From Rebecca billardiae RCC1528 (taxonomy: Eukaryota > Protista > Haptophyta), in NCBI GenBank assembly GCA_965240325.2, contig OZ251253.1, positions 248,001-312,000 of the forward strand: 64,000 bases of DNA. Direction: 5' to 3'. Under the pieces are notes generated by a model. That model made no database searches. It was not told the DNA's origin and saw nothing but the letters and a program-made list of their open reading frames with translations. Made by a program: the position numbers and the translations under genes. Positions 1-55,123 of the stretch are shown here, piece by piece (position 1 is the first letter of the stretch; each line of letters begins with the position of its first letter).

Positions 1-231
1 CGCGGGGCGCGCGGAGCAGCGCGGGCAGCGCGGAGCAGCGCGGAGCAGCGCGGAGCAGCGCGGAGCGCGCGGAGCAGCGCGGAGCAGCGCGGAGCAGCGC
101 GGAGCAGCGCGGAGCAGCGCGGAGCAGCGCGGAGCAGCGCGGAGCAGCGCGGAGCGCGCGGAGCAGCGCGGAGCAGCGCGGAGCAGCGCGGAGCAGCGCG
201 GAGCAGCGCGGAGCAGCGCGGAGCAGCGCGG
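1..231. repeat. 10-bp tandem satellite (GCGCGGAGCA)n, running off the window start
   Basis: About 20 near-perfect GCGCGGAGCA units read directly, with occasional 8-bp deletion variants. Confidence 0.95.
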
Positions 232-5439: not shown

Positions 5440-8400
5440 ATGTCCCCTGCCAGCCTCGTCGGGAAGGAAGTGGTGATCATCGGCAGCGGTGCTCGTGCGC
5501 GCGTGAGCGAGTGCATCGGCGATGACCGTCTCGTGCTCGCTCCGGGCAGCACGATCCGCGACGTAGGGCCCGACCGCGTGCTCGCGCTGCCCCTCGCGCC
5601 CAGCTCCGCGCAGTACTTCAACGAGCACAACCTCGACTTCGACACGCGTGTCGGCGACGGCTTCGTCGACCCCGGCCGTATGCGCGGCGATGCTGCGCTA
5701 CCCGCGCCAGAAGATCTTGCTCGCCGTCCCGCTGGCTCGCCAGGTGGCCGCGAGGTGCTCGTGGTCGACACGCGCATCGACGCGGCCCTGCGCGATCGCA
5801 TCGAGGTGGCTCGCTCTCGGCTACAGCCCATCACGGACATGCGCGATCGCATCAAGGTGCTGGGCGCGCACGTGTCCGAGGTGCTCGGGGGCTTGACGGA
5901 CGATCTCGTCGAGCAGTCCAACAACGATATCAGCGCGCTCGTGCAGGAAAGGGGCTCGATGCTCGTGCCGCTCGGCGACATCTCGCTAGGCGTGTGCCGG
6001 CACCGCGCGCTGCTCTTCAAAGTGCTGTGCGACGCGCTCGGCATCGAGTGCGCGCTGGTGCGCGGCGACTTCGCGGGGACCAGGTCTGCTGGGGCGCACG
6101 CGTGGAACGTGGTGCACGTTTACGGCAGCGCGTACATCGTCGACGTGATGCACCGGCCGGGCGAGATCTACCGGCGAGAGGACGCGGACGCGTGTGCGCG
6201 CTACCATCGCCTCGCCGAGCGCGGCGCTGGCGGCGCTGCGCAGCATCACGGTGCCGGCCTGAACAGCCTGCCCGCGCCAGCGCCGCGTCAGCAGTGGTAC
6301 GTGCGCCCGGCCGACGTCCAGATCGAGCGCGGCGTGGATGGCGGCGAGGTGCTGCTCGGCAGCGGCGGCTTTGGGCGCGTGTACGCGGCGCGGCTGCGGG
6401 GCGCGCAGCCGGTCGCGGTGAAGCGGCTGAACGCCGCGGGGTCCGAAGCGCGCCGCGAGTTTGAGCCCGAGGTGGCGATGCTGCACCAGCTGCGCCACGC
6501 GCACATCGTGAGCTTCTACGGCGCGTGCGACGAGCCGGAGAACCTGATGATCGTCACCGAGCGCATGCGCGGTGGCAGCCTGAGCGACGCGCTCGCGATT
6601 GAGCCGACGCGCGTGGCGTGGGCGGCGGGCGGGCAGCGCATCGCGCTGCACGTGGCGTACGCGCTGCACTACCTGCACACGCTCGAGCCGCCCGTGGTGC
6701 ACTACGACGTCAAGCCGGCCAACGTGCTCCTCACCGAGGACTACAGCCTGGCCAAGCTCGCCGATGTCGGGCTGGCGCGCACCAAGTCACACTCGCGCGT
6801 GACGGTGCCAGGGCTCACGCTCGCGTTTGCCGCGCCCGAGGTGCTGCTCGGCCGCCACGCGAGCGAGAAGGCCGACGTCTTCAGCTTTGGCGTGCTCGTC
6901 GAGGTGCTGCTCACGCAGCAGCAGCCGAACGGGCGGGCGCGCGCTCGAGTGCCCGCCGGCACGCCGACGGCAGTCCGCCGCCTGCATGCGCGCTGCATGC
7001 TAGAGGAACCAGCGCTCCGGCCCAGTGCCTCCGAGCTCGTCGTGGCGCTTGAGGGCGCAGCCGATGCGGCTGAGAGGGCGGCTGGTGGCGGAGCGGCGGC
7101 GCACGCCGCTGCGCACATGGCTGCGCAGCCGTCGCCGCACGAGCCGCCCGTAGCGGTGCCGTCGCCGCCCGGGCCGCCCGCCGCAGTCGCAGGCCCCGCC
7201 GCTGCAGCTGTGCCCGGATCGGCAGCGCTGGCAGCGATGGGCTGGGCTGAGCTTTGCGCTGCCATCCTCACCGCCGCGTCCGACCCAGCCGCAGCTGAGT
7301 GCGCGCTGAGAGTAGCTGCGGCGCGGACGCGATCAGAAATCAAAGCTAGGCAGCAGGCGGCCGAGGCGGGCGCGCTCGAGGCGGTGGTGCGCGTGATGGG
7401 CGCGCACGCCGCGCACGCGGGCGTGCAGGAGCAGGCGTGCACGGCGCTGCGCCACATCTGCGCCGGCACCGACGCGGCTGGCCTCGCGCGCAAGCAGCGG
7501 GCGGCGGAGGCGGGCGCGCTCGAGGCGGCGGTGCGCGCGATGGGCGCGCACGCCGCGCACGCGGGCATGCAGGAGCAGGCGTGCTTGGCGCTGTGCAATG
7601 TCAGCGCCGGCACCGACGCGGCTGGCCTCGCGCGCAAGCAGCGGGCGGCCGAGGCGGGCGCGCTCGAGGCGGCGGTGCGCGCGATGGGCGCGCACGGCGC
7701 GCACGCGGGCGTGCAGCAGTACGGGTGCTGGGCGCTGTGCACCATCTGCGCCGGCAACGACGCGGCTGGCCACGCGCGCGCGCAGCGGGCGGCCGAGGCG
7801 GGCGCGCTCGAGGCGGCGGTGCGCGCGATGGGCGCGCACGCCGCGCACGCGGGCGTGCAGCAGTACGGGTGCTGGGCGCTGCGCAACATCTGCTTCGGCA
7901 CCGACGCGGCTGGCCTCGCGCGCAAGCAGCGGGCGGCCGAGGCGGGCGCGCTCGAGGCGGCGGTGCGCGCGATGGGCGCGCACGCCGCGCACGCGGGCGT
8001 GCAGGAGCAGGCGTGCCGGGTGCTGTGCAACATCTGCCTCGGCACCGACGCGGCTGGCCGCGCGCGCGCGCAGCGGGCGGCCGAGGCGGGCGCGCTCGAG
8101 GCGGCGGTGCGCGCGATGGGCGCGCACGCCGCGCACGCGGGCGTGCAGCAGTACGCGTGCTTGGCGCTGTGCAACATCTGTGTCGGCAGCGACGCGGCTG
8201 GCCTCGCGCGCGCGCAGCGGGCGGCCGAGGCGGGCGCGCTCGAGGCGGCGGTGCGCGCGATGGGCGCGCACGCCGCGCACGCGGGCGTGCAGCAGTACGG
8301 GTGCTGGGCGCTGTGCACCATCTGCGCCGGCAACGACGCGGCTGCCCACGCGCGCGCGCAGCGGGCGGCCGAGGCGGGCGCGCTCGAGGCGGCGGTGCGC

Positions 8401-9333
8401 GCGATGGGCGCGCACGCCGCGCACGCGGGCGTGCAGCAGTACGGGTGCTGGGCGCTGCGCAACATCTGCTTCGGCACCGACGCGGCTGGCCTCGCGCGCA
8501 AGCAGCGGGCGGCCGAGGCGGGCGCGCTCGAGGCGGCGGTGCGCGCGATGGGCGCGCACGCCGCGCACGCGGGCGTGCAGGAGCAGGCGTGCTTGGCGCT
8601 GTGCACCATCTGCGCCGGCACCGACGCGGCTGGCCTCGCGCGCGCGCAGCGGGCGGCCGAGGCGGGCGCGCTCGAGGCGGCGGTGCGCGCGATGGGCGCG
8701 CACGGCGCGCACGCGGACGTGCAGCAGTACGGGTGCTGGGCGCTGTGCAACATCTGCGCCGGCACCGACGCGGCTGGCCTCGCGCGCAAGCAGCGGGCGG
8801 CCGAGGCGGGCGCGCTCGAGGCGGCGGTGCGCGCGATGGGCGCGCACGGCGCGCACGCGGGCGTGCAGCAGTACGCGTGCATGGCGCTGTGCAACATCTG
8901 CGCTGGCACCGGCGCGGCTGTCCTCGCGCTCGAACAGCGGGCGGCCGAGGCGGGCGCGCTCGAGGCGGCGGTGCGCGCGATGGGCGCGCACGGCGCGCAC
9001 GCGGGCGTGCAGCAGTACGCGTGCTGGGCGCTGGCCAGCGTCTGCAACGGCACCGACGCGGCTGGCCTCGCGCGCGCGCAGCGGGCGGCCGAGGCGGGCG
9101 CGCTCGAGGCGGCGGTGCGCGCGATGGGCGCGCACGCCGCGCACGCGGGCGTGCAGGAGCAGGCGTGCCGGGTGCTGTGCAACATCTGCGGCGGCACCGA
9201 CGCGGCTGGCCTCGCGCGCGCGCAGCGGGCGGCCAAGGCGGGCGCGCGTGGGGCTCTCGAGGCTGCGCAGGCTGCACACTCGAGCCACAGCCAGATCAGG
9301 AGCTTGACGACGCAGCTGCTCGGCATGATATAG
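5440..9333 (+). CDS. EDR1/CTR1-like domain + TKL-type non-RD protein kinase + 13 armadillo repeats (1297 aa, intronless)
   Basis: EDR1 motifs GVCRHRALLFKVLCD, HAWNVV, YIVDVMHRPG; kinase motifs LGSGGFGRVY, VAVK, HYDVKPANVLL, DVG, APE; ARM consensus AGALEAAVRAM...VQxxACxALxNI. Confidence 0.9.
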   Translation: MSPASLVGKEVVIIGSGARARVSECIGDDRLVLAPGSTIRDVGPDRVLALPLAPSSAQYFNEHNLDFDTRVGDGFVDPGRMRGDAALPAPEDLARRPAGSPGGREVLVVDTRIDAALRDRIEVARSRLQPITDMRDRIKVLGAHVSEVLGGLTDDLVEQSNNDISALVQERGSMLVPLGDISLGVCRHRALLFKVLCDALGIECALVRGDFAGTRSAGAHAWNVVHVYGSAYIVDVMHRPGEIYRREDADACARYHRLAERGAGGAAQHHGAGLNSLPAPAPRQQWYVRPADVQIERGVDGGEVLLGSGGFGRVYAARLRGAQPVAVKRLNAAGSEARREFEPEVAMLHQLRHAHIVSFYGACDEPENLMIVTERMRGGSLSDALAIEPTRVAWAAGGQRIALHVAYALHYLHTLEPPVVHYDVKPANVLLTEDYSLAKLADVGLARTKSHSRVTVPGLTLAFAAPEVLLGRHASEKADVFSFGVLVEVLLTQQQPNGRARARVPAGTPTAVRRLHARCMLEEPALRPSASELVVALEGAADAAERAAGGGAAAHAAAHMAAQPSPHEPPVAVPSPPGPPAAVAGPAAAAVPGSAALAAMGWAELCAAILTAASDPAAAECALRVAAARTRSEIKARQQAAEAGALEAVVRVMGAHAAHAGVQEQACTALRHICAGTDAAGLARKQRAAEAGALEAAVRAMGAHAAHAGMQEQACLALCNVSAGTDAAGLARKQRAAEAGALEAAVRAMGAHGAHAGVQQYGCWALCTICAGNDAAGHARAQRAAEAGALEAAVRAMGAHAAHAGVQQYGCWALRNICFGTDAAGLARKQRAAEAGALEAAVRAMGAHAAHAGVQEQACRVLCNICLGTDAAGRARAQRAAEAGALEAAVRAMGAHAAHAGVQQYACLALCNICVGSDAAGLARAQRAAEAGALEAAVRAMGAHAAHAGVQQYGCWALCTICAGNDAAAHARAQRAAEAGALEAAVRAMGAHAAHAGVQQYGCWALRNICFGTDAAGLARKQRAAEAGALEAAVRAMGAHAAHAGVQEQACLALCTICAGTDAAGLARAQRAAEAGALEAAVRAMGAHGAHADVQQYGCWALCNICAGTDAAGLARKQRAAEAGALEAAVRAMGAHGAHAGVQQYACMALCNICAGTGAAVLALEQRAAEAGALEAAVRAMGAHGAHAGVQQYACWALASVCNGTDAAGLARAQRAAEAGALEAAVRAMGAHAAHAGVQEQACRVLCNICGGTDAAGLARAQRAAKAGARGALEAAQAAHSSHSQIRSLTTQLLGMI
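7357..9228 (+). repeat. Coding tandem array, 13 x 144 bp (48-aa ARM repeats)
   Basis: GCGGCCGAGGCGGGCGCGCTCGAG recurs every 144 bp; span 1872 = 13 x 144. Confidence 0.95.
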
Positions 9334-9363
9334 CTAGGCCGTGAGGCGGGCGCTATTGCAGGC

Positions 9364-9420
9364 TTATTATTATTATTATTATTTTCTAATATATTATTAT
9401 TATTATATTAATTTATTAAG
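9364..9420. repeat. (TAT)n microsatellite in the 3' flank of kinase-ARM gene 1 (also at about 17998 and 24571)
   Basis: TTATTATTA runs directly after each of the three stop codons. Confidence 0.85.
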
Positions 9421-9722
9421 TTCATCTACGGGCGGACCGCGTCATCGCTCGTCGGTTGCGTCATATCAAATCCCGCTGCCGCGGGCGGCCGCTAGCGCGC
9501 TGCGTGCAGTGCTAGCTACTGCGACGGGCTTGGGTCTTGGGGCTGCCCAGCAGGCCCACTCCCAGAGCGAGTCGCCGAGTGTGTGCCCGCGAACGGTTAC
9601 TACACGCGTCGCACTCGCTCCGCGAACAAATTCTGCGCGCTCTCGCGAGCTGATGATATGTACTGTGTCGTCGTCGTATCGTGTCGACCCGTAGTACGGC
9701 AGCAGCCCCACAGTGCCCGCGC

Positions 9723-10461
9723 TCACAGCGCGCCGCCGATCGCCGCGGTGATCGACACGCCGCCCAGGACGATCACCAGCGCGGTCACCGCGCCCGCGAA
9801 CCGCCCCGGGTCGACGCGCCGGTTGATCCACGTGCCGGCCACGCTCGCGACCAGCACGCCCGGCACCGCGGCGAGGCTCTGCGAGAGCAGGTTGGAGGTG
9901 AGCAGCCCGGCGGCGGCGAAGTTGTACATCGCGAGCGCCTGCACGGGCAGGAAGAAGCGCGAGAGCATCGTCCGCTGCTCCGCGGGCGACCACTCGCGCA
10001 ACGTCCCGAACACAACTGCCGGCGGGCCGGGCTCGGCCACCGCGCCGCCGAGCAGCCCGGCGCACAGCCCGAAGAGCGCCGTCTTGGCGAAGGGCAGCGT
10101 GCGCAGCTCGGCGGCGGGGCGCGCGCCGCCGCCTTGCGCGCGCTCCTCGCCCACCAGCTCGAGCGAGGGCAGCTCGCAGAAGTCCGCGTCCGGCCGCGCG
10201 CAGTCCGGGCGGCGCAGCTTCCAGCCGCCGTACCCGACGAGCAGGACTCCGACCACGCCGCGCACGAGGTGCGGGTCGAGGCTGACGAGCGCGCGCACGC
10301 CGAGGGGCACGCCGACGAGCGCGGCGGCGAAGAGCGTGAGCGACTCGACCCACCGCCCCGTCGCGCGCATCTGCCCGTCGAGCAGGTCGGTCACCAAGTT
10401 GGCCGTGACGAGCACGGACGAGACGGCGGTCACGAGCGGCGCCGCCGCCGTCACGTCGAGG
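9723..10461 (-). pseudogene. 5'-truncated TauE/SafE-family transporter (copy 1)
   Basis: Near-identical to 18355..19093, but homology stops at LDVTAAAP; the N-terminal ~115 codons are absent. Confidence 0.8.
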
Positions 10462-10893
10462 TCCGGGCGGTGAGTACGGGCTTTCCGATGGCGGCCGAGG
10501 TTCATGCATGGTCAACGCCGCCATCGGCGAGCCCGCTGCGCCGCGCACCGGCTGCTTCGTCGCCAGTGCTCGACGGAGCGCGCTGCAATTACGCGCGCCG
10601 GCGCACCGGCGCGGCGCGCGCATGCTCCGCCCGAGGTGGGGCCCAAACAAACTTGGTCACGTCCTCTCACCTCCCACTCTGTTGATCTGTGTGGCTCCTG
10701 CTCAGGGACCCACACACATCACCCGGCCTCTCCCACCCCTCTGTTGGGTCTGTGTGCGCCCGCGGGGATAGCCCGCGTGCCGGGGCCATGCGCCCAGCCA
10801 TTGCGGAGTCCACCGCGAGTTGCGACCGGCTGCCAGCGTGCGCGCAGGATGGCTGCCGATGTGCGAACGTCGGTGTAGCTGTGTGCGCCGTGC

Positions 10894-22900: not shown

Positions 22901-24540
22901 ACGCCGCGCACGCGGGCGTGCAGGAGCAGGCGTGCTGGGCGCTGCGCAACATCTGCACCGGCACCGACGCGGCTGGCCTCGCGCGCAAGCAGCGGGCGGC
23001 CGAGGCGGGCGCGCTCGAGGCGGCGGTGCGCGCGATGGGCGCGCACGCCGCGCACGTGGGCGTGCAGGAGGAGGCGTGCGCGGCGCTGTGCAACATCTGC
23101 AACGGCACCGACGCGGCTGGCCTCGCGCGCGCGCAGCGGGCGGCCGAGGCGGGCGCGCTCGAGGCGGCGGTGCGCGCGATGGGCGCGCACGCCGCGCACG
23201 CGGGCGTGCAGGAGCAGGCGTGCTGGGCGCTGCGCAACATCTGCACCGGCACCGACGCGGCTGGCCTCGCGCGCAAGCAGCGGGCGGCCGAGGCGGGCGC
23301 GCTCGAGGCGGCGGTGCGCGCGATGGGCGCGCACACCACGCACGCGGGCGTGCAGGAGCGGGCGTGCCGGGCGCTGTGCAACATCTGCAACGGCACCGAC
23401 GCGGCTGGCCTCGCGCGCGCGCACCGGGCGGCCGAGGCGGACGCGCTCGAGGCGGCGGTGCGCGCGATGGGCGCGCACGCCGCGCACGCGGGCGTGCAGC
23501 AGTACGCGTGCTGGGCGCTGCGCAACATTTGCGCCGGCGACGACGCGGCTGGCCTCGCGCGCAAGCAGCGGGCGGCCGAGGCGGGCGCGCTCGAGGCGGC
23601 GCTGCGCGCGATGGGCGCGCACGCCGCGCACGCGGGCGTGCAGGAGCAGGCGTGCTGGGCGCTGCGCAACATCTGCACCGGCACCGACGCGGCTGGCCTC
23701 GCGCGCAAGCAGCGGGCGGCCGAGGCGGGCGCGCTCGAGGCGGCGGTGCGCGCGATGGGCGCGCACGCCGCGCACGTGGGCGTGCAGGAGGAGGCGTGCG
23801 CGGCGCTGTGCAACATCTGCAACGGCACCGACGCGGCTGGCCTCGCGCGCGCGCAGCGGGCGGCCGAGGCGGGCGCGCTCGAGGCGGCGGTGCGCGCGAT
23901 GGGCGCGCACGCCGCGCACGTGGGCGTGCAGGAGCAGGCGTGCTTGGCGCTTCGCAACATCTGCGTCGGCGACGACGCGGCTGGCCTCGCGCGCAGGCAG
24001 CGGGCGGCCGAGGCGGGCGCGCTCGAGGCGGCGGTGCGCGTGATGGGCGCGCACGCCGCGCACGCGGGCGTGCAGGAGCAGGCGTGCTGGGCGCTGGTCA
24101 ACATCTGCGTCGGCGACGACGCGGCTGGCCTCGCGCGCAGGCAGCGGGCGGCCGAGGCGGGCGCGCTCGAGGCGGTGGTGCGCGCGATGGGCGCGCACGC
24201 CGCGCACGCGGACGTGCAGGAGGAGGCGTGCTGGGCGCTGTGCAACATCTGCGCCGGCACCGACGCGGCTGGCCGCGCGCGCGCGCAGCGGGCGGCCGAG
24301 GCGGGCGCGCTCGAGGCGGCGCTGCGCGCGATGGGCGCGCACGCCGCGCACGCGGGCGTGCAGCAGTACGGGTGCTGGGCGCTGCGCAACATCTGCGTCG
24401 GCGACGACGCGGCTGGCCTCGCGCGCAAGCAGCGGGCGGCCGAGGCGGGCGCGCGTGGGGCTCTCGAGGCTGCGCAGGCTGCACACTCGAGCCACAGCCA
24501 GATCAGGAGCTTGACGACGCAGGTGCTCGGCATGATATAG
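19924..24540 (+). CDS. MLKL/RPW8-like helical N-terminal domain + acidic linker + RD protein kinase + 17 armadillo repeats; one intron 21481..21645
   Basis: ATG 19924 (MVEPVSVLVFVVQAAC...); kinase motifs LGQGTFGRVY, VAIK, HRDIKSNNVLL, DFG, GTLRYMAPE; CAG|GTGCGC...CACAG|GTG intron restores YNDEQ-VKDAVRDKRDRP; same ARM array and C-cap as genes 1/2. The N-terminal domain call is less certain than the kinase and ARM calls. Confidence 0.85.
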   Translation: MVEPVSVLVFVVQAACNDAIKRLEAVRESRGKVDELRDELAFLTMWLPHAREVDASDAQRTRALRQALRQVQRVASAIDQFARVFGARKRARRYVHAVADRNRFRQLGAQLDAAENRFFRALDVVTALRVQALETRLTALHVDDAEREADELQAAADADADEDEEEDEEEDDGDLEEAAADGVTDAIASAVAGAFGEEAGEAARGACDALRTDLAADARALIAELREQADADADADPEHSRRREVAAAARGRGRDGLRRMADEAERSLEAATQRAQVARTTGRPRAEWPAEYEMRADAVRRGELLGQGTFGRVYAGTLVASGEPVAIKEALQPGLGAVEMDELRRELVVQATARHVNVLGALGAHTEAPPPPFIVLERARHSLRAALGGAHGQLSDAAAAACMRDVAAGILFLHSQRVHHRDIKSNNVLLGADDRWKLADFGLATVKATTRHTLNSASTATTAHAGGTLRYMAPELLGISRSGARPMGDKVDSFAFAMLIYELLTRKLPWSIEGYNDEQVRQAPPLPRVIAATRQAPQLPRASRAGGWRAGRADVLTTGFRPRAAARPPPPRAQVKDAVRDKRDRPRVPRAALAGAPALQRARDVMVGLWRHEATERTAVTRDVVAELDEVARLLAPPPPPPSDEELRAMGWAELCSALNEAPHADAAQRVAGEMSSRTHAGDTARPEAAEAGALEAVVRAMGAHAAHAGVQRTACWALRNICAGTDAAGLARAQRAAEAGALEVAVRAMGAHAAHADVQLAACSALCNICKGTDAAGPARAQRAAEAGALEAAVRAMGAHAAHAGVQQHGCWALCNICNGTDAAGPARAQRAAEAGALEAAVRAMGAHAAHAGVQEQACWALRNICYGDDAAGLARKQRAAEAGALEAAVRAMGAHGAHAGVQQYGCWALCNICNGTDAAGLARAHRAAEADALEAAVRAMGAHAAHAGVQQYACWALRNICAGDDAAGLARKQRAAEAGALEAALRAMGAHAAHAGVQEQACWALRNICTGTDAAGLARKQRAAEAGALEAAVRAMGAHAAHVGVQEEACAALCNICNGTDAAGLARAQRAAEAGALEAAVRAMGAHAAHAGVQEQACWALRNICTGTDAAGLARKQRAAEAGALEAAVRAMGAHTTHAGVQERACRALCNICNGTDAAGLARAHRAAEADALEAAVRAMGAHAAHAGVQQYACWALRNICAGDDAAGLARKQRAAEAGALEAALRAMGAHAAHAGVQEQACWALRNICTGTDAAGLARKQRAAEAGALEAAVRAMGAHAAHVGVQEEACAALCNICNGTDAAGLARAQRAAEAGALEAAVRAMGAHAAHVGVQEQACLALRNICVGDDAAGLARRQRAAEAGALEAAVRVMGAHAAHAGVQEQACWALVNICVGDDAAGLARRQRAAEAGALEAVVRAMGAHAAHADVQEEACWALCNICAGTDAAGRARAQRAAEAGALEAALRAMGAHAAHAGVQQYGCWALRNICVGDDAAGLARKQRAAEAGARGALEAAQAAHSSHSQIRSLTTQVLGMI
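21988..24435 (+). repeat. Coding tandem array, 17 x 144 bp ARM repeats
   Basis: Span 2448 = 17 x 144. Confidence 0.95.
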
Positions 24541-24640: not shown

Positions 24641-26386
24641 GTCTAGCCGTCCTCGTGAACGCCGACGCCAACTGCTGGCCGAAGGTGGGCACGCCGCCTG
24701 GCATGTCGATGCCGAGGCGGCTGCGTGTGTTCCTACTCAGTGGGATTTACGTGTCCTCATGCCTTGGCGAGCGGCAGCAGATGCGGTGGGCATGCCGCTC
24801 GCCGTCGACGAGACGCGGTGCGTGAGTGATCCCGCGCGGACGTCCGCTGACGGAAGGCTGAGCGCCTGCGGACTCGTCGACTGAACCTCCACCTGACCGC
24901 CCGGGAGCAGCACTGCCGGGGACCTAACCTGAAAAACCCAATCGTGTTGGGAGGCAGGGGGTCACATGAGCCCTAAGTGCAGCGCCGCAAGACCGGGCGG
25001 TCGGACGGCGGGTGTTGTGATCCCGCCGCCCGAGCACCAGACCAACGGGCCCTGGGTGGGCGGGTTGCCGAAAGATGTTGGTCGGTGCACGCGACGCGCC
25101 ACCCGCGTGCGAGCCGCCGCCGCCGGCGACGCAGGACGAGCTTGGCTGGAGCCATCTCGCACGCCGCGCCTGGCGAAGCAGGCGGCAGAGGCCGGCGCCG
25201 GAAACCGATCTCCTCGGCAGAAAGAACAACCCGGACAGACTGTTTGTCCGGGAGCAGCGCCCTTTGAGGCGATGGTCTGGTAGAGGGCGATGTGGCTGAT
25301 GAGCGGCGCTGGCGCCCGGCGTTCTTGTCGTCCTCTTAGACAATCAGTTATTGTACCAATAACCCCACGTCTAGCCGTCCTCGTGAACGCCGACGCCAAC
25401 TGCTGGCCGAAGGTGGGCACGCCGCCTGGCATGTCGATGCCGAGGCGGCTGCGTGTGTTCCTACTCAGTGGGATTTACGTGTCCTCATGCCTTGGCGAGC
25501 GGCAGCAGATGCGGTGGGCATGCCGCTCGCCGTCGACGAGACGCGGTGCGTGAGTGATCCCGTTTCATGGTGTGTTGGGGAGCACCGCGTGGAGGAGAAT
25601 CCCATTGAGCGATGGGAAGGAAAGGGGCAAGGCACGTGTGAGTCGCGCACGCACGAGGGCCGGCCAGCGGGGGCTGGGCAGGTGGGGCAGTGCGAGTGAG
25701 ACGGAACCCGAATAGGAGAGACAGCAGGCAGCCGGCCCCGCGGGCGCGGCGCTGCGGAAGCAGGAGAAGGCTAGACGGCCTTTGCGGATGCTGTGAACGG
25801 CCCGCGGGTGCGCACGGGGCCCGGCGCGCGGTGTGCCGCCAGCGGTCCTTGTGTAGGAGCCGGCTGGCGTTGGCACCGGGGCGATCCCGAGGCAGGGCGG
25901 GAGAGATGGAGCAGCGATCCGCGTGGGGGCGCACCCACGGAGGAGGAGGCATGTGGCGAAGAGGGAACGGTGCGATCGGGGCGGGTGCGGAAGAGCCACA
26001 GGGTGCGCACGCACACAGAGAGAGAAGAGGCGGTGGCCCGAAGCGCGAGGGGGCGCGATGCGGAGCGTTGCTTACCGCCGAGTTGCCGAAAGATGTTGGT
26101 CGGTGCACGCGACGCGCCACCCGCGTGCGAGCCGCCGCCGCCGGCGACGCAGGACGAGCTTGGCTGGAGCCATCTCGCACGCCGCGCCTGGCGAAGCAGG
26201 CGGCAGAGGCCGGCGCCGGAAACCGATCTCCTCGGCAGAAAGAACAACCCGGACAGACTGTTTGTCCGGGAGCAGCGCCCTTTGAGGCGATGGTCTGGTA
26301 GAGGGCGATGTGGCTGATGAGCGGCGCTGGCGCCCGGCGTTCTTGTCGTCCTCTTAGACAATCAGTTATTGTACCAATAACCCCAC
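24641..26386 (-). mobile_element. 1746-bp non-autonomous split-direct-repeat element (TOC1/PAT/Ngaro-like, DIRS order candidate)
   Basis: 194-bp repeat at 24641..24834 and 25369..25562; 305-bp repeat at 25064..25368 and 26082..26386; absent from the paralogous sites at about 9425 and 18059; no TSD or convincing ORF. Confidence 0.7.
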
Positions 26387-26682
26387 ATATAGGACCGCGT
26401 CAGCCGTACGTGCTCGTCGCGGTTGCGTCATATCAAATCCCGCTGCCGCGGGCGGCCGCTAGCGCGCTGCGCGCAGTGCTAGCTACTGCGACGGGCTTGG
26501 GTCTTGGGGCTGCCCAGCAGGCCCACTCCCAGAGCGAGTCGCCGAGTGTGTGCCCGCGAACGGTCACTACACGCGTCGCACTCGCTCCGCGAACAAATTC
26601 TGCGCGCTCGCGCGAGCTGATGATGTAGTGTCGTCGTCGTATCGTGTCCGCCCGTACGGCAGCAGCCCCACAGTGCCCGCGC

Positions 26683-27768
26683 TCACAGCGCGCCGCCGAT
26701 CGCCGCGGTGATCGACACGCCGCCCAGGACGATCACCAGCGCGGTCACCGCCCCCGCGAACCGCCCCGGGTCGACGCGCCGGTTGATCCACGTGCCGGCC
26801 ACGCTCGCGACCAGCACGCCCGGCACCGCGGCGAGGCTCTGCGAGAGCAGGTTGGAGGTGAGCAGCCCGGCGGCGGCGAAGTTGTACATCGCGAGCGCCT
26901 GCACGGGCAGGAAGAAGCGCGAGAGCATCGTCCGCTGCTCCGCGGGCGACCACTCGCGCAACGTCCCGAACACAACTGCCGGCGGGCCGGGCTCGGCCAC
27001 CGCGCCGCCGAGCAGCCCGGCGCACAGCCCGAAGAGCGCCGTCTTGGCGAAGGGCAGCGTGCGCAGCTCGGCGGCGGGGCGCGCGCCGCCGCCTTGCGCG
27101 CGCTCCTCGCCCACCAGCTCGAGCGAGGGCAGCTCGCAGAAGTCCGCGTCCGGCCGCGCGCAGTCCGGGCGGCGCAGCTTCCAGCCGCCGTACCCGACGA
27201 GCAGGACTCCGACCACGCCGCGCACGAGGTGCGGGTCGAGGCTGACGAGCGCGCGCACGCCGAGGGGCACGCCGACGAGCGCGGCGGCGAAGAGCGTGAG
27301 CGACTCGACCCACCGCCCCGTCGCGCGCATCTGCCCGTCGAGCAGGTCGGTCACCAAGTTGGCCGTGACGAGCACGGACGAGACGGCGGTCACGAGCGGC
27401 GCCGCCGCCGTCACGTCGAGGTGGAAGAAGAGGGAGAGGAGCGGCATCGCGAGGATGGCGTCGCCGAAGCCGAAGACGGCGGCGAAGAGCGAGGTGAACG
27501 CGAAGAGGCCGACGATGCCCAGGTTGACGCCGCTCAGCGCGGCGAGCACCATCGACTTGGCCGACCCCGCGGCGAGCGTCGCGGTCGGCGTCGCGACGAG
27601 CGCGGACTTTGCGCCGACGGCGCTCAGCACGTCGACTGCGGCGGTGTCGAGCAGCATCACCGCGCGGCTGCGCACGGGCGCACTCATCGACGGCAGGCTC
27701 GCAGGCCGCGGGATCGCGCAGCCGCCCGGAAGGCATAGCGCCAGGGCGGGGAGGGCGACGAGCCGCAT
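26683..27768 (-). CDS. TauE/SafE family membrane protein, 361 aa (copy 3)
   Basis: Same 1086-bp length and near identity to 18355..19440. Confidence 0.8.
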   Translation of the reverse strand: MRLVALPALALCLPGGCAIPRPASLPSMSAPVRSRAVMLLDTAAVDVLSAVGAKSALVATPTATLAAGSAKSMVLAALSGVNLGIVGLFAFTSLFAAVFGFGDAILAMPLLSLFFHLDVTAAAPLVTAVSSVLVTANLVTDLLDGQMRATGRWVESLTLFAAALVGVPLGVRALVSLDPHLVRGVVGVLLVGYGGWKLRRPDCARPDADFCELPSLELVGEERAQGGGARPAAELRTLPFAKTALFGLCAGLLGGAVAEPGPPAVVFGTLREWSPAEQRTMLSRFFLPVQALAMYNFAAAGLLTSNLLSQSLAAVPGVLVASVAGTWINRRVDPGRFAGAVTALVIVLGGVSITAAIGGAL

Positions 27769-28099
27769 CTTTCCCCAAGCCCGTCCAAATCGGGCGTACT
27801 TCCGGTGACGATTCGCCCCAAGCTGGTCGTTTTTTTTGGAGCGTGATCTCAACATCTCGCCAAATCTCCTCGAGCTCCCAAGTAATTAATTAAAAGCTGA
27901 GATCGCTGCCACTATTGAGGTTGTATGCACTGCATCGTTAAATCATTCTCGAGAAGCAGTCGTCCATCAGATCGATGAAATCTCATCGAGTCCACTGAGC
28001 AAGCAAGCACTCTCCGGCAACGCGGCATCTGAGGCACGCGGCGCGTCCTGTCCGCAACAGCGGCGGCACCAGCCCAGCGCGGCGCACGCGGCTCACGCA

Positions 28100-32830: not shown

Positions 32831-33374
32831 ATGCCCCGCCGCGACGACGAGGAGGAGGAGCCCAAGGAGCGCCGCCGCCGGCGCGACGACGAGGAGGAGG
32901 AGGAGGAGGAGGGCGGCGACGACCGCCGCGAGCGCCGCCGCGAGCGCCGCCGCGACGACGAGGACACCGAGAAGCCGCGCGAGCGCCGCCGCCGCGACGA
33001 CGAGGACGCTGAGAAGCCGCGCGAGCGCCGCCGGCGCGACGACGACGAGGACCGCCCGCCGCGGCGTGACGACGACCGTGACCGGAGCTACCGCGACGAG
33101 GGCCGCGACCGCCGCGGCGGCGGCGACCGCTACGGCGACCGCGACGGCGGCCGCGGCGGCGGCGGCTATGGCGGCGGCGGCGGCGGCTACGGCGACCGTG
33201 GCGGCGGCTATGGCGACCGCGATGGCGGCGGCCGTGGCGGGTACGGCGGCGGCGGGTACGGCGGGTACGGCGGTGGCGGCGGCTACGGCCCGCCCGGCGG
33301 CGCGTACGGCGGCGGCGGCGGCTACGGCCCGCCCGGCGGCTACGGCGGCGGCCAGGGTGGCTATGGCGGCGGCC

Positions 33375-33406
<32 letters not shown>

Positions 33407-34211
33407 CCGGACGGCCAGGGCGACAAGTGCTTCAACTGCGGCCAGCTGGGCCACCTCTCGCGGGACTGTCCCGATCGGAACCGAGGTACTGGCGCGGCGC
33501 CGCGAGCGAGCGCCGACGGCGCGCCGGTGCAGCGCGGCGGCGGGCGGCGGGCGGTGGCGGCAGAGGCTGCGGACGGCGCCGTGGCCGGGGCGGCGGCGGG
33601 GGCGGCGGCGGTGGTCCGGTGTTCCCGGTCCGGGCGGCGCGGGCGGTGGCGAGTGTCGGCGTGCGCGCGTTGGCGGGGCGTGCCGGTGGGGCGGACGCGG
33701 CGGAGGGAGGCGTGGTGCTTGGTCCCGTGCCGACGCTTGGCCGGCGTGCCGCGGCGTGGAGGCGGCGGTGGCGCCGCCGGCGCGCGACTGGCGGAGCCGC
33801 GGCGGCGCGGTTCGGCGGAGGGGGTGTGCGGCGCGCTCACTTCGTGTCTCGTGTCCCCTCTCCTCGCTGGCGGCGTGGCCGTCGGCGCGTGCTGCTCTGT
33901 GCGCCGTGCTGTGCTCCCGCCCGCCCGCGCGCGCGCGTGCCGCCCGCCCGCCCGCGCCGCGCGCGCGCGCTCGCGGCTGCCCGCGCCTGCGTCGTGCGCC
34001 CCTTCCGCGCCGCCGCGCGCCGCGCCCGCTGCTGCCGCGCCGCTGCCGCGCGCGTGCAGGCGAGAAGTGCTTCAACTGCGGCGGCTTTGGCCACATCTCG
34101 CGCAACTGCCCGGACCGCTCGAAGGGCGAGAAGTGCTTCAACTGCGGCGGCTTCGGCCACATCTCGCGCAACTGCCCCGACCGCAATGCCGGCACCGCGG
34201 GCGGCCCGTAA
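32831..34211 (+). CDS. Arg/Asp- and Gly-rich CCHC zinc-knuckle nucleic-acid-binding protein (CNBP/GIS2-like); intron 33486..34059
   Basis: Three CFNCGxxGHxSRxCP knuckles; RGG/YGG tracts; the intron joins NR-G-EKCFNC. Confidence 0.85.
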
Positions 34212-43650: not shown

Positions 43651-44727
<1,077 letters not shown>

Positions 44728-44743
44728 ATATATATATATATAT

Positions 44744-46129
<1,386 letters not shown>

Positions 46130-54995: not shown

Positions 54996-55123
<128 letters not shown>

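What the first reader, a model, noticed from the sequence alone, without database searches (positions are those of the whole stretch)
5440..24540. Tandem family of kinase receptors with hypervariable 48-aa armadillo arrays: candidate modular innate-immune/recognition system
Seen: three genes end in 13, 17 and 17 copies of a 144-bp unit that is nearly invariant even at synonymous sites. Consensus AAEAGALEAAVRAMGAHAAHAGVQ-x25-x26-(A/G)C-x29-AL-x32-x33-IC-x36-G-x38-DAAGLAR-x46-QR. Variation concentrates at 25 (Q/E/R/L), 26 (Y/Q/W/T/A/H/E/R), 29 (W/L/R/M/T/S/A), 32 (C/R/A/V), 33 (N/T/H/S), 36 (A/F/L/V/N/G/K/Y/T), 38 and 46. Established: in importin-alpha-type ARM repeats the WxxxN of helix 3 and its i+3/4 neighbours line the peptide-binding groove, and 25/26-29-32/33-36 is exactly that helical face. 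Inference: each repeat is a specificity module that is shuffled and diversified on a homogenised scaffold. This parallels fungal NLR WD40/TPR/ANK arrays and TAL-effector RVDs, but here it is wired directly to kinases without an NTPase, in an alga.
Basis: partly seen in the sequence, partly recalled or inferred. Interest (0 to 1): 0.93.

Follow-up and report, generated by a model that had tools for sequence, protein, structure and literature searches.

The report
Kinase genes with fast-diversifying armadillo sensor arrays
Three neighbouring genes of a very GC-rich alga (probably a pavlovophyte haptophyte) join signalling kinases to 13-17 near-identical armadillo repeats that differ mostly at residues predicted to line the peptide-binding groove. 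This evolutionary pattern is known from fungal immune receptors, but here it sits on kinases and no function has been shown.

Summary
Three + strand genes (5440-9333, 13495-17967, about 19924-24540) end in 13, 17 and 17 in-register 144-bp (48-aa) units that are 92% identical in DNA.

Variation is concentrated at positions 25, 26, 29, 32, 33, 36, 38 and 46. These 8 codons hold 60% of the minimum nonsynonymous events on 18% of the sites (p=1e-13). Their rate is about 4 times the silent rate and about 10 times that of loop positions that vary freely in the wider family.

An AlphaFold model (pLDDT 97) is an ARM solenoid closest to designed armadillo peptide binders. W29 and N33 align with the WxxxN groove motif.

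Units are shuffled within and between genes: block duplications, equal scaffold divergence within and between arrays, and a shared 3' flank.

The heads are an EDR1/CTR1-type peptidase-like domain with a non-RD kinase (two genes), and a probable MLKL_N-like helical bundle with an active-looking kinase (one gene). There is no NTPase, membrane segment or signal peptide, so these are cytoplasmic proteins, not membrane receptors.

A green-algal homologue carries the same EDR1-kinase head on a different focally variable repeat array.

Immune function, strain polymorphism, expression and read support are untested. Earlier unchecked notes of this scan report the same pattern on other DNA of this genome (ARM-BTB, caspase-ARM, Sel1, LRR).

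The parts
5440..9333 (+). Gene 1 (1297 aa): EDR1/CTR1-type peptidase-like domain + non-RD Ser/Thr kinase + 13-unit ARM array
   Evidence: Uninterrupted ORF. Pfam PF14381 at aa 56-243, Pkinase at aa 305-535, Arm.
5605..6168 (+). Gene 1 EDR1_CTR1_ARMC3 peptidase-like domain (Cys/His/Asp motifs present)
   Evidence: PF14381 E=1e-28 and Transglut_core E=1e-4. The CRHRA, HAWN and VDVM motifs are visible in the translation.
6352..7044 (+). Gene 1 protein kinase domain: Gly-loop GSGGFGRV, VAVK, HYD (non-RD), DVG, APE
   Evidence: Pfam; motif scan.
7357..9228 (+). Gene 1 ARM array, 13 x 144 bp; unit order A B C D E F G D H I J K L
9229..9333 (+). C-terminal cap (partial repeat + tail), shared by all three genes
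9723..10505 (-). TauE/SafE-type membrane protein gene, convergent; part of the 3' flank duplicated together with the array
   Evidence: PF01925 E=8e-17. The flank 9229-10462 is 99.5% identical to 17863-19094, and 9447-10462 is 98.5% identical to 26412-27422.
13495..17967 (+). Gene 2 (1490 aa): recent duplicate of gene 1 with a different 17-unit array
   Evidence: The N-terminal 639 codons versus gene 1 give pS 0.039, pN 0.0135, ratio 0.35.
15415..17862 (+). Gene 2 ARM array, 17 x 144 bp; unit order A M N O P Q R S K T U U Q R U K V (block Q R S/U K duplicated)
19924..24540 (+). Gene 3: helical MLKL_N-like head + RD kinase + 17-unit ARM array. The start ATG at 19924 is inferred. A probable in-frame 165-nt intron lies at 21481-21645.
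   Evidence: N-terminus.
19924..20400 (+). Gene 3 N-terminal helical domain, probably an MLKL_N/HeLo/RPW8-like four-helix bundle
   Evidence: Protein-atlas feature score 0.95 with 200/256 shared features to an MLKL_N cluster; all ten best family hits are in that clan. The head of paralog P0002 hits PF22215 at E=2.3e-5, 24.4 bits against a cut-off of 27. Gene 3 head versus P0002 head BLASTP E=0.003. Gene 3's own Pfam hit is not significant (E=9.9).
20824..21800 (+). Gene 3 kinase domain: GQGTFGRV, VAIK, HRD, DFG, APE all present
21988..24435 (+). Gene 3 ARM array, 17 x 144 bp; unit order W X Y Z a b c d e f b c d g h i j (block b c d duplicated). The first two units are the most divergent.
26412..27770 (-). 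Third copy of the TauE-containing 3' flank, separated from gene 3 by a 1.77-kb insertion (24641-26411)

Best explanation
These are three tandem, recently duplicated genes for soluble, presumably cytoplasmic sensor kinases.

The C-terminal half of each protein is an armadillo solenoid of 13-17 near-identical 48-residue modules between fixed N- and C-caps. Helix 3 of successive modules forms the concave groove. N33 is kept in 79% of units and would hold the backbone of an extended peptide, as Asn does in importin-alpha and in designed armadillo proteins. Positions 25, 26, 29, 32 and 36 (plus loop 38) would form the side-chain pockets.

Unequal crossing-over and gene conversion within and between the three arrays keep the scaffold uniform and reshuffle module order and number. 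Positive selection keeps new groove variants, so each gene displays a different string of binding modules.

I infer that ligand binding by the array controls the N-terminal signalling head. In genes 1 and 2 the head is a Raf-like (EDR1/CTR1-type) non-RD kinase with a peptidase-like domain. In gene 3 it is an MLKL_N-like helical bundle with an active-looking kinase. The most likely role is recognition of fast-changing, probably biotic (viral, microbial or conspecific non-self) ligands, coupled to stress or cell-death signalling. This follows the logic of an NLR with the NTPase replaced by a kinase.

Shown here: the anatomy, the fold, the focal excess of nonsynonymous change, and the shuffling. 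Inferred: peptide binding, kinase regulation, and the biotic or immune role.
For: Anatomy and fold:
- Three arrays and domain architectures.
- AlphaFold model of six units with pLDDT 97.3 and pTM 0.93; per unit the helices are 6-16, 21-34 and 40-3'.
- Best PDB matches are designed armadillo peptide binders (TM 0.7-0.77).
- Profile search of PDB: engineered ARM 7e-42, importin-alpha 1e-21, LRRK2 ARM region 5e-20.

Groove mapping:
- The register aligns W29, N33 and position 26 with dArmRP W33, N37 and E30.
- These residues are described as the peptide-binding residues in PMC4756613 and PMC3885797.
- The six most variable helix-3 positions span a 120-degree arc (p=0.006).

Selection:
- Pairwise pN/pS: 0.35/0.09 at the 8 variable codons against 0.032/0.034 elsewhere.
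- Minimum events: 39 nonsynonymous / 5 synonymous at the 8 codons against 26/17 elsewhere (Fisher p=0.003).
- The nonsynonymous rate at the 8 codons against the scaffold silent rate gives p=7e-7.
- Positions that vary freely in the wider family (12, 15, 16, 19-22, 40, 41, 48) are frozen here: 0.20 against 1.95 events per site (p=1e-9).
- The heads are under purifying selection (ratio 0.35).

Shuffling:
- 32 distinct 8-residue signatures among 47 units, and four gametes for most site pairs.
- Block duplications and different unit order in genes that are 98% identical upstream.
- Scaffold divergence is the same within and between arrays (0.020-0.027).
- The array, C-cap and 3' flank are shared at 98.5-99.5% identity.

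Context:
- The best homologue of the gene 1 head, P0185 of Pseudoscourfieldia marina, has the same EDR1 + non-RD kinase head. It carries 12 near-identical 25-aa DUF285 repeats with focal variation (pN/pS 1.25).
- ARM relatives carry TIR, TIR-kinase or caspase heads.
- The gene 3 head is MLKL_N-like.
Against: - No ligand, no expression data and no population data exist. No RNA run was listed, and no read or contig could be laid on the arrays.
Solvent exposure and concave-face location rest on secondary structure, an ideal helical wheel and profile alignment, not on measured geometry.
- Variable positions 18, 43 and 46 lie outside helix 3. Position 32 aligns with dArmRP G36, which PMC4756613 describes as an inter-repeat contact.
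- Event-based omega within the variable codons alone is only 1.5-1.8.
- Very high GC3 may depress silent change and inflate ratios.
- Recombination-aware site models were not run.
- Positions 25 and 26 are in complete linkage (EQ against QY), so part of the diversity comes from a few old module types.
- Earlier notes of this scan report many frozen-scaffold repeat families in this genome. A general genomic propensity for repeat homogenisation may therefore be involved.
- The MLKL_N assignment for gene 3 itself is not significant by Pfam.
Confidence: 0.55

Rival explanations
1. These are housekeeping scaffold or adaptor kinases. The arrays bind fixed endogenous partners or substrates. Gene conversion homogenises everything except the module-specific contact residues, which purifying selection keeps different. 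The pattern then mimics diversifying selection without any arms race.
For: ARM domains are usually scaffolds for endogenous partners. N33 and half of the W29 residues are retained. The first unit and the last units are conserved between genes 1 and 2. Positions 25 and 26 occur as only two linked types.
Against: Genes 1 and 2 are 98% identical in their heads but share only 3-4 of 13 and 17 units in position, and they differ in unit number. This is not expected if each position contacts a fixed ligand. There are 32 different groove signatures in 47 units with free recombination among sites. Recent block duplications place identical modules side by side.
Confidence: 0.25
2. The arrays are young, neutrally evolving tandem amplifications. 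The units were amplified recently, and the variable codons are mutational hot spots or unconstrained surface sites. The arrays may be dispensable.
For: Scaffold pN is about equal to pS in pairwise counts (0.032 against 0.034). Unit g1_r11 looks degenerate (D39G, G42V, R45L). The genome is rich in repeats and microsatellites.
Against: Other exposed positions that vary freely in the wider family are frozen here, with a 10-fold lower rate (p=1e-9). The nonsynonymous rate at the 8 variable codons exceeds the silent rate about 4-fold (p=7e-7). Variable codons change at the first and second bases through multi-step paths while third bases stay fixed. The reading frames are intact over 1.9-2.5 kb in all three genes.
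Confidence: 0.08
3. The arrays are an assembly artefact. Their number and order of units, or the differences between genes 1 and 2, come from mis-assembly of a repetitive, 79% GC region.
For: No read or contig of the only runs found could be laid on the arrays. The exact proteins are not in the public protein collection.
Against: The 144-bp period is perfect and all three frames stay open with no frameshift in 6.8 kb of array. The units differ by a mean of 11 of 144 bases, enough for long reads to place them. The same window carries perfectly resolved (TA)80-88 tracts, which suggests an accurate long-read assembly.
Confidence: 0.05

Closest known systems
Fungal NLR repeat domains with high internal conservation (HNWD/HET-E WD40, ANK, TPR; Paoletti 2007, Chevanne 2010, Dyrka 2014 = PMC4986451)
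   Same: Near-identical tandem repeats. Exchange of repeats within and between paralogs. Positive selection on a few positions that map to the binding face. Death-fold heads (HeLo-like) occur in the family.
   Different: The fold here is ARM. There is no NOD/STAND NTPase and a kinase takes its place. The host is a haptophyte alga. Strain polymorphism is not shown here.
Importin-alpha and designed armadillo repeat proteins (dArmRP, e.g. PDB 5AEI, 5MFC; PMC4756613, PMC11228518)
   Same: Same fold (TM 0.7-0.77). Same helix-3 register, with W and N at the WxxxN positions. Identical modules are stacked into a modular peptide-binding groove. The natural variable positions correspond to the face that engineers treat as the binding face.
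   Different: The unit is 48 aa, not 42: two extra residues in the H2-H3 loop and four in the H3-H1 segment. W is replaced in 47% of units. Binding is untested. The array is fused to kinases.
Plant EDR1/CTR1/SIS8 Raf-like MAPKKKs
   Same: An N-terminal EDR1_CTR1_ARMC3 peptidase-like domain followed by a TKL kinase (33-37% identity over the kinase).
   Different: The plant proteins end after the kinase. Genes 1 and 2 add a long ARM array and have a non-RD (HYD), DVG kinase. Orthology is not established.
P0185, Pseudoscourfieldia marina 'DUF285 domain-containing protein' (CP150390.1; locus L002)
   Same: The closest homologue of the gene 1/2 head (43% identity over 86% of the head). It has the same HxD non-RD and DVG motifs. 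It also ends in near-identical tandem repeats with focal variation.
   Different: The repeats are 25-aa DUF285 (BspA-like LRR-type) units, not ARM. A coiled coil lies between the kinase and the repeats. The host is a green alga.
MLKL (animal and plant mixed-lineage kinase domain-like proteins)
   Same: Gene 3 has an N-terminal helical domain with an MLKL_N-like signature, followed by a kinase-fold domain.
   Different: The gene 3 kinase keeps all catalytic motifs, so it is not a pseudokinase. It carries a C-terminal ARM array. The four-helix-bundle assignment is indirect.
Brown-algal LRR-ROCO and NB-ARC-TPR candidate receptors (PMC3341825, PMC11378527)
   Same: Algal, intracellular, fast-evolving repeat sensors diversified by shuffling of repeat units.
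   Different: Those use LRR or TPR units encoded by single exons and a GTPase or NB-ARC switch. Here ARM units lie in one exon and the partner is a kinase.
ARMC3 (animal ARM protein with an EDR1-like domain) and the LRRK2 ARM domain
   Same: ARMC3 also combines ARM repeats with the EDR1_CTR1_ARMC3 domain. The LRRK2 ARM profile matches the arrays (PF23744).
   Different: The domain order and partners differ. ARMC3 has no kinase. There is no Roc-COR here. Neither protein has homogenised variable arrays.

Membership tests
Armadillo repeat (Pfam PF00514, ARM clan) | Sequence match to the Arm profile above the curated cut-off | tested here: met
   107-252 bits against a cut-off of 20.6 for the three proteins.
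Armadillo repeat (Pfam PF00514, ARM clan) | Three-helix repeat stacked into a superhelical solenoid | tested here: met
   AlphaFold model with pLDDT 97.3 and three helices per unit. Foldseek TM 0.7-0.77 to designed ArmRPs. The unit is 48 aa instead of about 42.
Importin-alpha-type peptide-binding ARM groove | WxxxN motif on helix 3 of successive repeats | tested here: met
   W29 and N33 align with the dArmRP/importin W and N. W is present in 25 of 47 units and N in 37 of 47.
Importin-alpha-type peptide-binding ARM groove | Binds extended peptides in the groove | not testable with these tools
   Needs binding assays or a structure of a complex.
Hypervariable, internally conserved repeat regime of fungal NLRs (Dyrka 2014 criteria) | Over 85% internal repeat identity across at least 100 aa | tested here: inconclusive
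   Mean pairwise amino-acid identity is 84.5%, identity to the consensus is 89%, and DNA identity is 92% over 624-816 aa. This sits on the threshold.
Hypervariable, internally conserved repeat regime of fungal NLRs (Dyrka 2014 criteria) | Repeat exchange within and between family members (concerted evolution) | tested here: met
   Equal scaffold divergence within and between arrays. Identical units shared by genes 1 and 2. Block duplications. A shared 3' flank.
Hypervariable, internally conserved repeat regime of fungal NLRs (Dyrka 2014 criteria) | Positive selection on a few positions located on the binding surface | tested here: met
   Counting tests and helix-3 mapping. HyPhy-type site models and coordinate-based mapping were not run.
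Hypervariable, internally conserved repeat regime of fungal NLRs (Dyrka 2014 criteria) | Repeat-number polymorphism between strains | not testable with these tools
   Only one assembly is available. Paralogs differ (13 against 17 units). No usable reads.
NLR / STAND receptors | Central NACHT or NB-ARC NTPase | tested here: not met
   No NTPase family appears in the Pfam scans of the three proteins.
EDR1/CTR1 Raf-like MAPKKK | EDR1_CTR1_ARMC3 domain followed by a TKL-type kinase | tested here: met
   PF14381 E=1e-28 plus the kinase. The best named kinase hits are SIS8/EDR1/CTR1. The extra ARM array and the non-RD kinase are departures.
MLKL family | N-terminal four-helix bundle (PF22215 MLKL_N) | tested here: inconclusive
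   Gene 3's own Pfam hit has E=9.9. Paralog P0002 scores E=2.3e-5 but is below the cut-off. The atlas feature score is 0.95 to MLKL_N clusters.
MLKL family | Pseudokinase domain (lost catalytic motifs) | tested here: not met
   VAIK, HRD, DFG and APE are all present in gene 3.
Membrane receptor kinases | Signal peptide and transmembrane segment with an extracellular ligand-binding domain | tested here: not met
   The maximum 19-residue Kyte-Doolittle hydropathy is 1.5-1.9, and only in Ala-rich stretches. The N-termini are not hydrophobic leaders.
ROCO / LRRK2 | Roc GTPase and COR domains | tested here: not met
   Only the ARM_LRRK2 profile matches. Roc and COR are absent.

The most novel reading that the evidence does not exclude
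Haptophytes and other marine protists may have a class of intracellular immune receptors without an NTPase, built as 'effector head (four-helix death bundle, TIR, peptidase-like) - kinase - ARM array'. In these, near-identical ARM modules would act as a combinatorial peptide-reading code of about two residues per module, a natural counterpart of designed armadillo binders. Unequal crossing-over would continually reshuffle the modules to track viral or microbial proteins.
Probability: 0.3. Interest if true: 0.9.

Novelty: new variant of a known kind. Interest (0 to 1): 0.7.

Why it matters
Almost nothing is known about how haptophytes recognise viruses and other enemies, although they are major marine primary producers. 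These genes show the evolutionary pattern of fungal and brown-algal candidate immune receptors: a homogenised repeat scaffold, a selected binding face and repeat shuffling. Here the pattern is on an ARM fold wired directly to kinases and to a probable MLKL-like death domain.

If the function holds, it would show that receptor logic of the NLR type can be built without the NTPase switch. It would also give concrete candidates for algal immunity or allorecognition.

Separately, the arrays are a natural library of stackable armadillo modules. About 32 groove variants sit on one scaffold. This bears directly on efforts to engineer modular peptide binders.

The three paralogs, together with the green-algal EDR1-kinase-DUF285 homologue, form a ready comparison set.

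Tried and rejected
- Single-sequence AlphaFold of the gene 1 array gave a useless model (pLDDT 50). It was replaced by a run with a 31-row alignment.
- Model coordinates are not exposed to scripts, so no solvent-accessibility or concave/convex calculation could be made.
- Single-sequence phmmer of the array against PDB found nothing. The profile search did.
- The exact proteins are not in the 15-billion-protein collection.
- Sequencing runs: only three low-depth Logan-contig runs of one sample. Four short contigs lay on the gene 1 head and flank, none on the array. No RNA run was listed.
- An exact 39-mer of the unit scaffold has no match in metagenome contigs.
- A word-indexed search with the gene 3 head found no homologue. 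PDB phmmer with the head found nothing meaningful.
- The D. lutheri locus of P0002 shows no nucleotide synteny with the window.
- ORFs between the genes (10.7-12.3 kb, 24.9-26.3 kb, 18.1-19.5 kb) have no Pfam family.
- The membrane-receptor reading was considered and rejected because there is no transmembrane segment.
- NLR and ROCO membership were rejected because there is no NTPase.
- Literature searches found no description of ARM arrays of this kind on kinases in algae. A 2017 TALE-inspired screen met armadillo repeats among near-identical repeat proteins but set them aside (PMC5472282).
Full report
OBSERVATION

Tandem Repeats Finder reports three arrays of period 144:
- 7350-9247: 13.2 copies, 92% matches.
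- 15408-17881: 17.2 copies, 93% matches.
- 21987-24454: 17.1 copies, 91% matches.

Each array closes a long + strand ORF: 5440-9333, 13495-17967 and 19579-24540. For the third gene the likely start is the ATG at 19924.

In register, the units are exactly 48 codons long. They begin at 7357, 15415 and 21988 and number 13, 17 and 17. Of the 47 units, 36 are unique. Mean pairwise identity is 92% in DNA and 84.5% in protein.

Entropy peaks at positions 36, 29, 26, 46, 32, 38, 25 and 33, with lesser peaks at 18, 27 and 43. Eighteen positions are invariant, and most codons are identical down to the third base.

WHAT THE PROTEINS ARE

Pfam results:
- Genes 1 and 2: EDR1_CTR1_ARMC3 peptidase-like domain (aa 56-243, E=1e-28), protein kinase (aa 305-535) and Arm.
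- Gene 3: kinase and Arm behind an unassigned helical head.
- No NTPase family is present.

Kinase motifs:
- Genes 1 and 2 carry GSGGFGRV, VAVK, HYD (non-RD), DVG and APE.
- Gene 3 carries GQGTFGRV, VAIK, HRD, DFG and APE.
- All three therefore look catalytically competent.

None of the proteins has a transmembrane-like segment or a hydrophobic leader. They are predicted to be soluble cytoplasmic proteins, not membrane receptors.

Gene 3 probably has one in-frame 165-nt intron, GT..AG at 21481-21645. This is suggested by the alignment with P0002.

The gene 3 head (about 150 aa) gives several lines of evidence:
- A protein-language-model match of 0.95 (200 of 256 shared features) to an MLKL_N cluster. 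The other best family hits are MLKL_N, RPW8, MCAfunc and SesA types.
- The head of P0002, a Diacronema lutheri protein with the same head-kinase-ARM build, hits PF22215 MLKL_N at E=2.3e-5. That is 24.4 bits, just under the cut-off of 27.
- The P0002 head aligns with the gene 3 head at E=0.003.
- Gene 3's own Pfam match is not significant.

I therefore treat the MLKL_N-like four-helix bundle as probable, not established.

THE FOLD AND WHERE THE VARIATION SITS

A single-sequence AlphaFold run failed (pLDDT 50). With a 31-row alignment of 48-aa-period relatives (A1), six units fold with pLDDT 97.3 and pTM 0.93. Each unit has three helices, at positions 6-16, 21-34/35 and 40-48 running into 1-3 of the next unit.

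The best structural neighbours are designed armadillo repeat proteins in complex with (KR)n or (RR)n peptides (TM 0.7-0.77). A profile of A1 finds engineered ARM proteins (7e-42), importin-alpha (1e-21) and the LRRK2 ARM region (5e-20).

That alignment fixes the register. The 48-aa unit has two extra residues in the H2-H3 loop and four in the H3-H1 segment. Helix 3 aligns residue for residue:
- Position 26 aligns with dArmRP E30.
- Position 29 aligns with W33.
- Position 33 aligns with N37.
- Position 36 aligns with S40.
- Position 32 aligns with G36.

[quoted passage not shown] PMC4756613 names Glu30 and Trp33 as surface-exposed residues of the dArmRP peptide-binding site.

On an ideal helical wheel, the six most variable positions of 21-36 are exactly 25, 26, 29, 32, 33 and 36. 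They span 120 degrees; 45 of 8008 possible six-position sets do as well (p=0.006). The conserved V23, A27, C28, A30, L31, I34 and C35 lie on the opposite face.

Caveats:
- Model coordinates could not be read, so no accessibility was computed.
- Position 36 lies at the very end of helix 3.
- Position 38 is in the following loop.
- Positions 18, 43 and 46 lie outside helix 3.
- Position 32 corresponds to a dArmRP residue described as an inter-repeat contact.

IS IT SELECTION?

Pairwise Nei-Gojobori counts over all unit pairs:

| Codon set | pN | pS |
|---|---|---|
| All 48 codons | 0.091 | 0.040 |
| 8 variable codons | 0.35 | 0.09 |
| Other 40 codons | 0.032 | 0.034 |

Tree-free minimum-event counts:
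- The 8 variable codons have 39 nonsynonymous and 5 synonymous events. The rest have 26 and 17 (Fisher p=0.003).
- 60% of nonsynonymous events fall on 18% of nonsynonymous sites (p=1e-13).
- The nonsynonymous rate of the 8 codons is 2.0 per site. The scaffold silent rate is 0.51 per site (p=7e-7).

An internal control comes from 83 ungapped 48-aa units of 43 other proteins of the family. There, the loop and outer positions 12, 15, 16, 19-22, 40, 41 and 48 are as variable as the groove positions. In the window's arrays those positions show 0.20 amino-acid events per site, against 1.95 at the 8 variable codons (p=1e-9). Relaxed constraint on exposed residues therefore does not explain the pattern.

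The heads of genes 1 and 2 are under purifying selection (pS 0.039, pN 0.0135, ratio 0.35). This also shows that the silent divergence among units is about the age of the gene 1/2 duplication.

Limits of these tests:
- Recombination-aware site models were not available.
- Very high GC3 may depress silent change.
- Positions 25 and 26 occur only as two linked types (EQ and QY).

SHUFFLING

Labelling each distinct unit with a letter gives the following orders:
- Gene 1: A B C D E F G D H I J K L
- Gene 2: A M N O P Q R S K T U U Q R U K V
- Gene 3: W X Y Z a b c d e f b c d g h i j

Genes 1 and 2 are 98% identical over 639 head codons. Yet they share only the first unit and the last two units in position. 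Blocks of 2-4 units are duplicated inside each array.

Scaffold divergence is the same within arrays (0.020-0.027) as between arrays (0.021-0.025). The three genes therefore draw on one pool of units.

There are 32 different 8-residue signatures among the 47 units. Most pairs of variable sites show all four gametes.

The homogenised tract continues past the arrays. The C-cap and about 1.2 kb of 3' flank include a convergent TauE-family gene (PF01925). They are 99.5% identical between genes 1 and 2 and 98.5% identical to the gene 3 copy. In the gene 3 copy a 1.77-kb insertion (24641-26411) interrupts the flank.

Upstream of the arrays, genes 1 and 3 share only a short 'MGWAELC' cap motif, which P0002 also has in related form. 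The first two units of gene 3 are the most divergent. This fits old ARM domains on both heads whose interior and 3' side were recently exchanged.

RELATIVES AND CONTEXT

The 43-48-aa ARM subfamily is large: 3822 clusters at E<=1e-3 and 148 at E<=1e-30. No member is more than 58% identical to the window's units.

Of 62 relatives with at least four units, the median internal identity is 45%. Only P0050 (ENA contig, L001) is homogenised, at 98%. P0002 is at 68%.

Relatives combine the ARM domain with other heads:
- Caspase: P0003, P0029.
- TIR: P0016.
- TIR + kinase: P0047.
- Kinase: P0023, P0040.

The head is always N-terminal to the array.

None of the 107 scored relatives of the gene 1 head has EDR1 + kinase + Arm.

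The best relative of the gene 1 head is P0185 of the green alga Pseudoscourfieldia marina (43% identity over 86% of the head). It has the same EDR1 domain and the same non-RD/DVG kinase. It ends in 12 near-identical 25-aa DUF285 repeats (84% DNA identity). Their variation sits at positions 14, 15, 18, 21 and 22, with overall pN/pS 1.25. The same signalling head has therefore been joined to two unrelated, focally variable repeat arrays in two distant algae. I take this as the best comparative support for a sensor role of the arrays.

The organism is probably a pavlovophyte haptophyte. The closest named hit is D. lutheri. The window's GC content of about 72% matches the 73% reported for that genome (PMC8379373). 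There is no nucleotide synteny with the P0002 locus.

Earlier unchecked notes of this scan report the same frozen-scaffold/variable-codon pattern elsewhere in this genome: ARM-BTB, caspase-ARM, Sel1-MYND, LRR-scramblase and EsV-1-7 zinc repeats. This suggests a genome-wide repertoire. It also warns that repeat homogenisation as such is common in this genome.

COMPARISON WITH KNOWN SYSTEMS

The evolutionary regime matches the one described for fungal NLR repeat domains in PMC4986451: high internal conservation, exchange within and between paralogs, and positive selection on binding-face positions. In spirit it also matches brown-algal LRR-ROCO and NB-ARC-TPR genes (PMC3341825).

These genes are not NLRs or ROCO proteins, because no NTPase is present. 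They are not membrane receptor kinases. Gene 3 is not a canonical MLKL, because its kinase motifs are intact.

Structurally, the arrays are the natural counterpart of designed armadillo peptide binders.

In the held literature I found no description of homogenised, groove-variable ARM arrays on kinases. A 2017 screen noticed armadillo repeats among TALE-like near-identical repeats and set them aside.

VERDICT

- The structural and evolutionary inference is well supported.
- The immune or recognition function is a reasoned inference without direct evidence.
- Assembly support, expression and polymorphism could not be tested.
- I rate this a new variant of a known kind, with interest 0.7.

Noticed in passing
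window 9723-10505 (-), about 18081-19442, 26412-27770: A TauE/SafE-family membrane protein gene lies convergent to each ARM gene. It is triplicated with the array's 3' flank at 98.5-99.5% identity. The copy next to gene 1 is cut short at the duplication boundary, about 10462.
   Followed up: partly
window 24641-26411: A 1.77-kb insertion separates gene 3 from its copy of the shared 3' flank. Its ORFs have no Pfam family. It could be a mobile element.
   Followed up: partly
window 21481-21645: A probable in-frame 165-nt GT..AG intron lies in the C-lobe of the gene 3 kinase. Reading it through adds a Pro/Arg-rich stretch that is absent from the D. lutheri paralog.
   Followed up: partly
window 8797-8940 (unit g1_r11): One unit of gene 1 carries three scaffold changes (D39G, G42V, R45L) in the H3-H1 segment. 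It may be a decaying or structurally deviant module.
   Followed up: no
L002:10001-13021 (Pseudoscourfieldia marina CP150390.1): This is an EDR1-like domain + non-RD kinase + coiled coil + 12 near-identical 25-aa DUF285 repeats, varying at positions 14, 15, 18, 21 and 22. It is a second, independent 'kinase + focally variable repeat array' build.
   Followed up: partly
L001:8001-10694 (ENA ERZ25074474 contig): P0050 is an ARM protein with about 10 units that are 98% identical. The few differences fall at the positions equivalent to 32 and 33 and in the following loop. No recognisable partner domain is present.
   Followed up: no
L003:10001-12859 (Diacronema lutheri JAGTXO010000019.1): P0002 has an MLKL_N-like head, a kinase and 7 ARM units at 68% identity. 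It sits about 6 kb from a contig end.
   Followed up: no
window 43654-43814, 45951-46126, 54998-55121: Three perfect (TA)n/(AT)n microsatellites of 80, 88 and 62 copies lie in an otherwise 70-80% GC region.
   Followed up: no
window 1-231 and 60756-60911: A 10-bp repeat CGCGGAGCAG occurs 23.5 times at the window start. A 39-bp unit occurs 4 times at 99% identity.
   Followed up: no
window 33090-34184: A Gly/Arg-rich low-complexity coding repeat is followed by a duplicated 66-bp unit encoding a CCHC zinc-knuckle motif (CFNCGGFGHISRNC). It looks like a CNBP-like nucleic-acid-binding gene.
   Followed up: no
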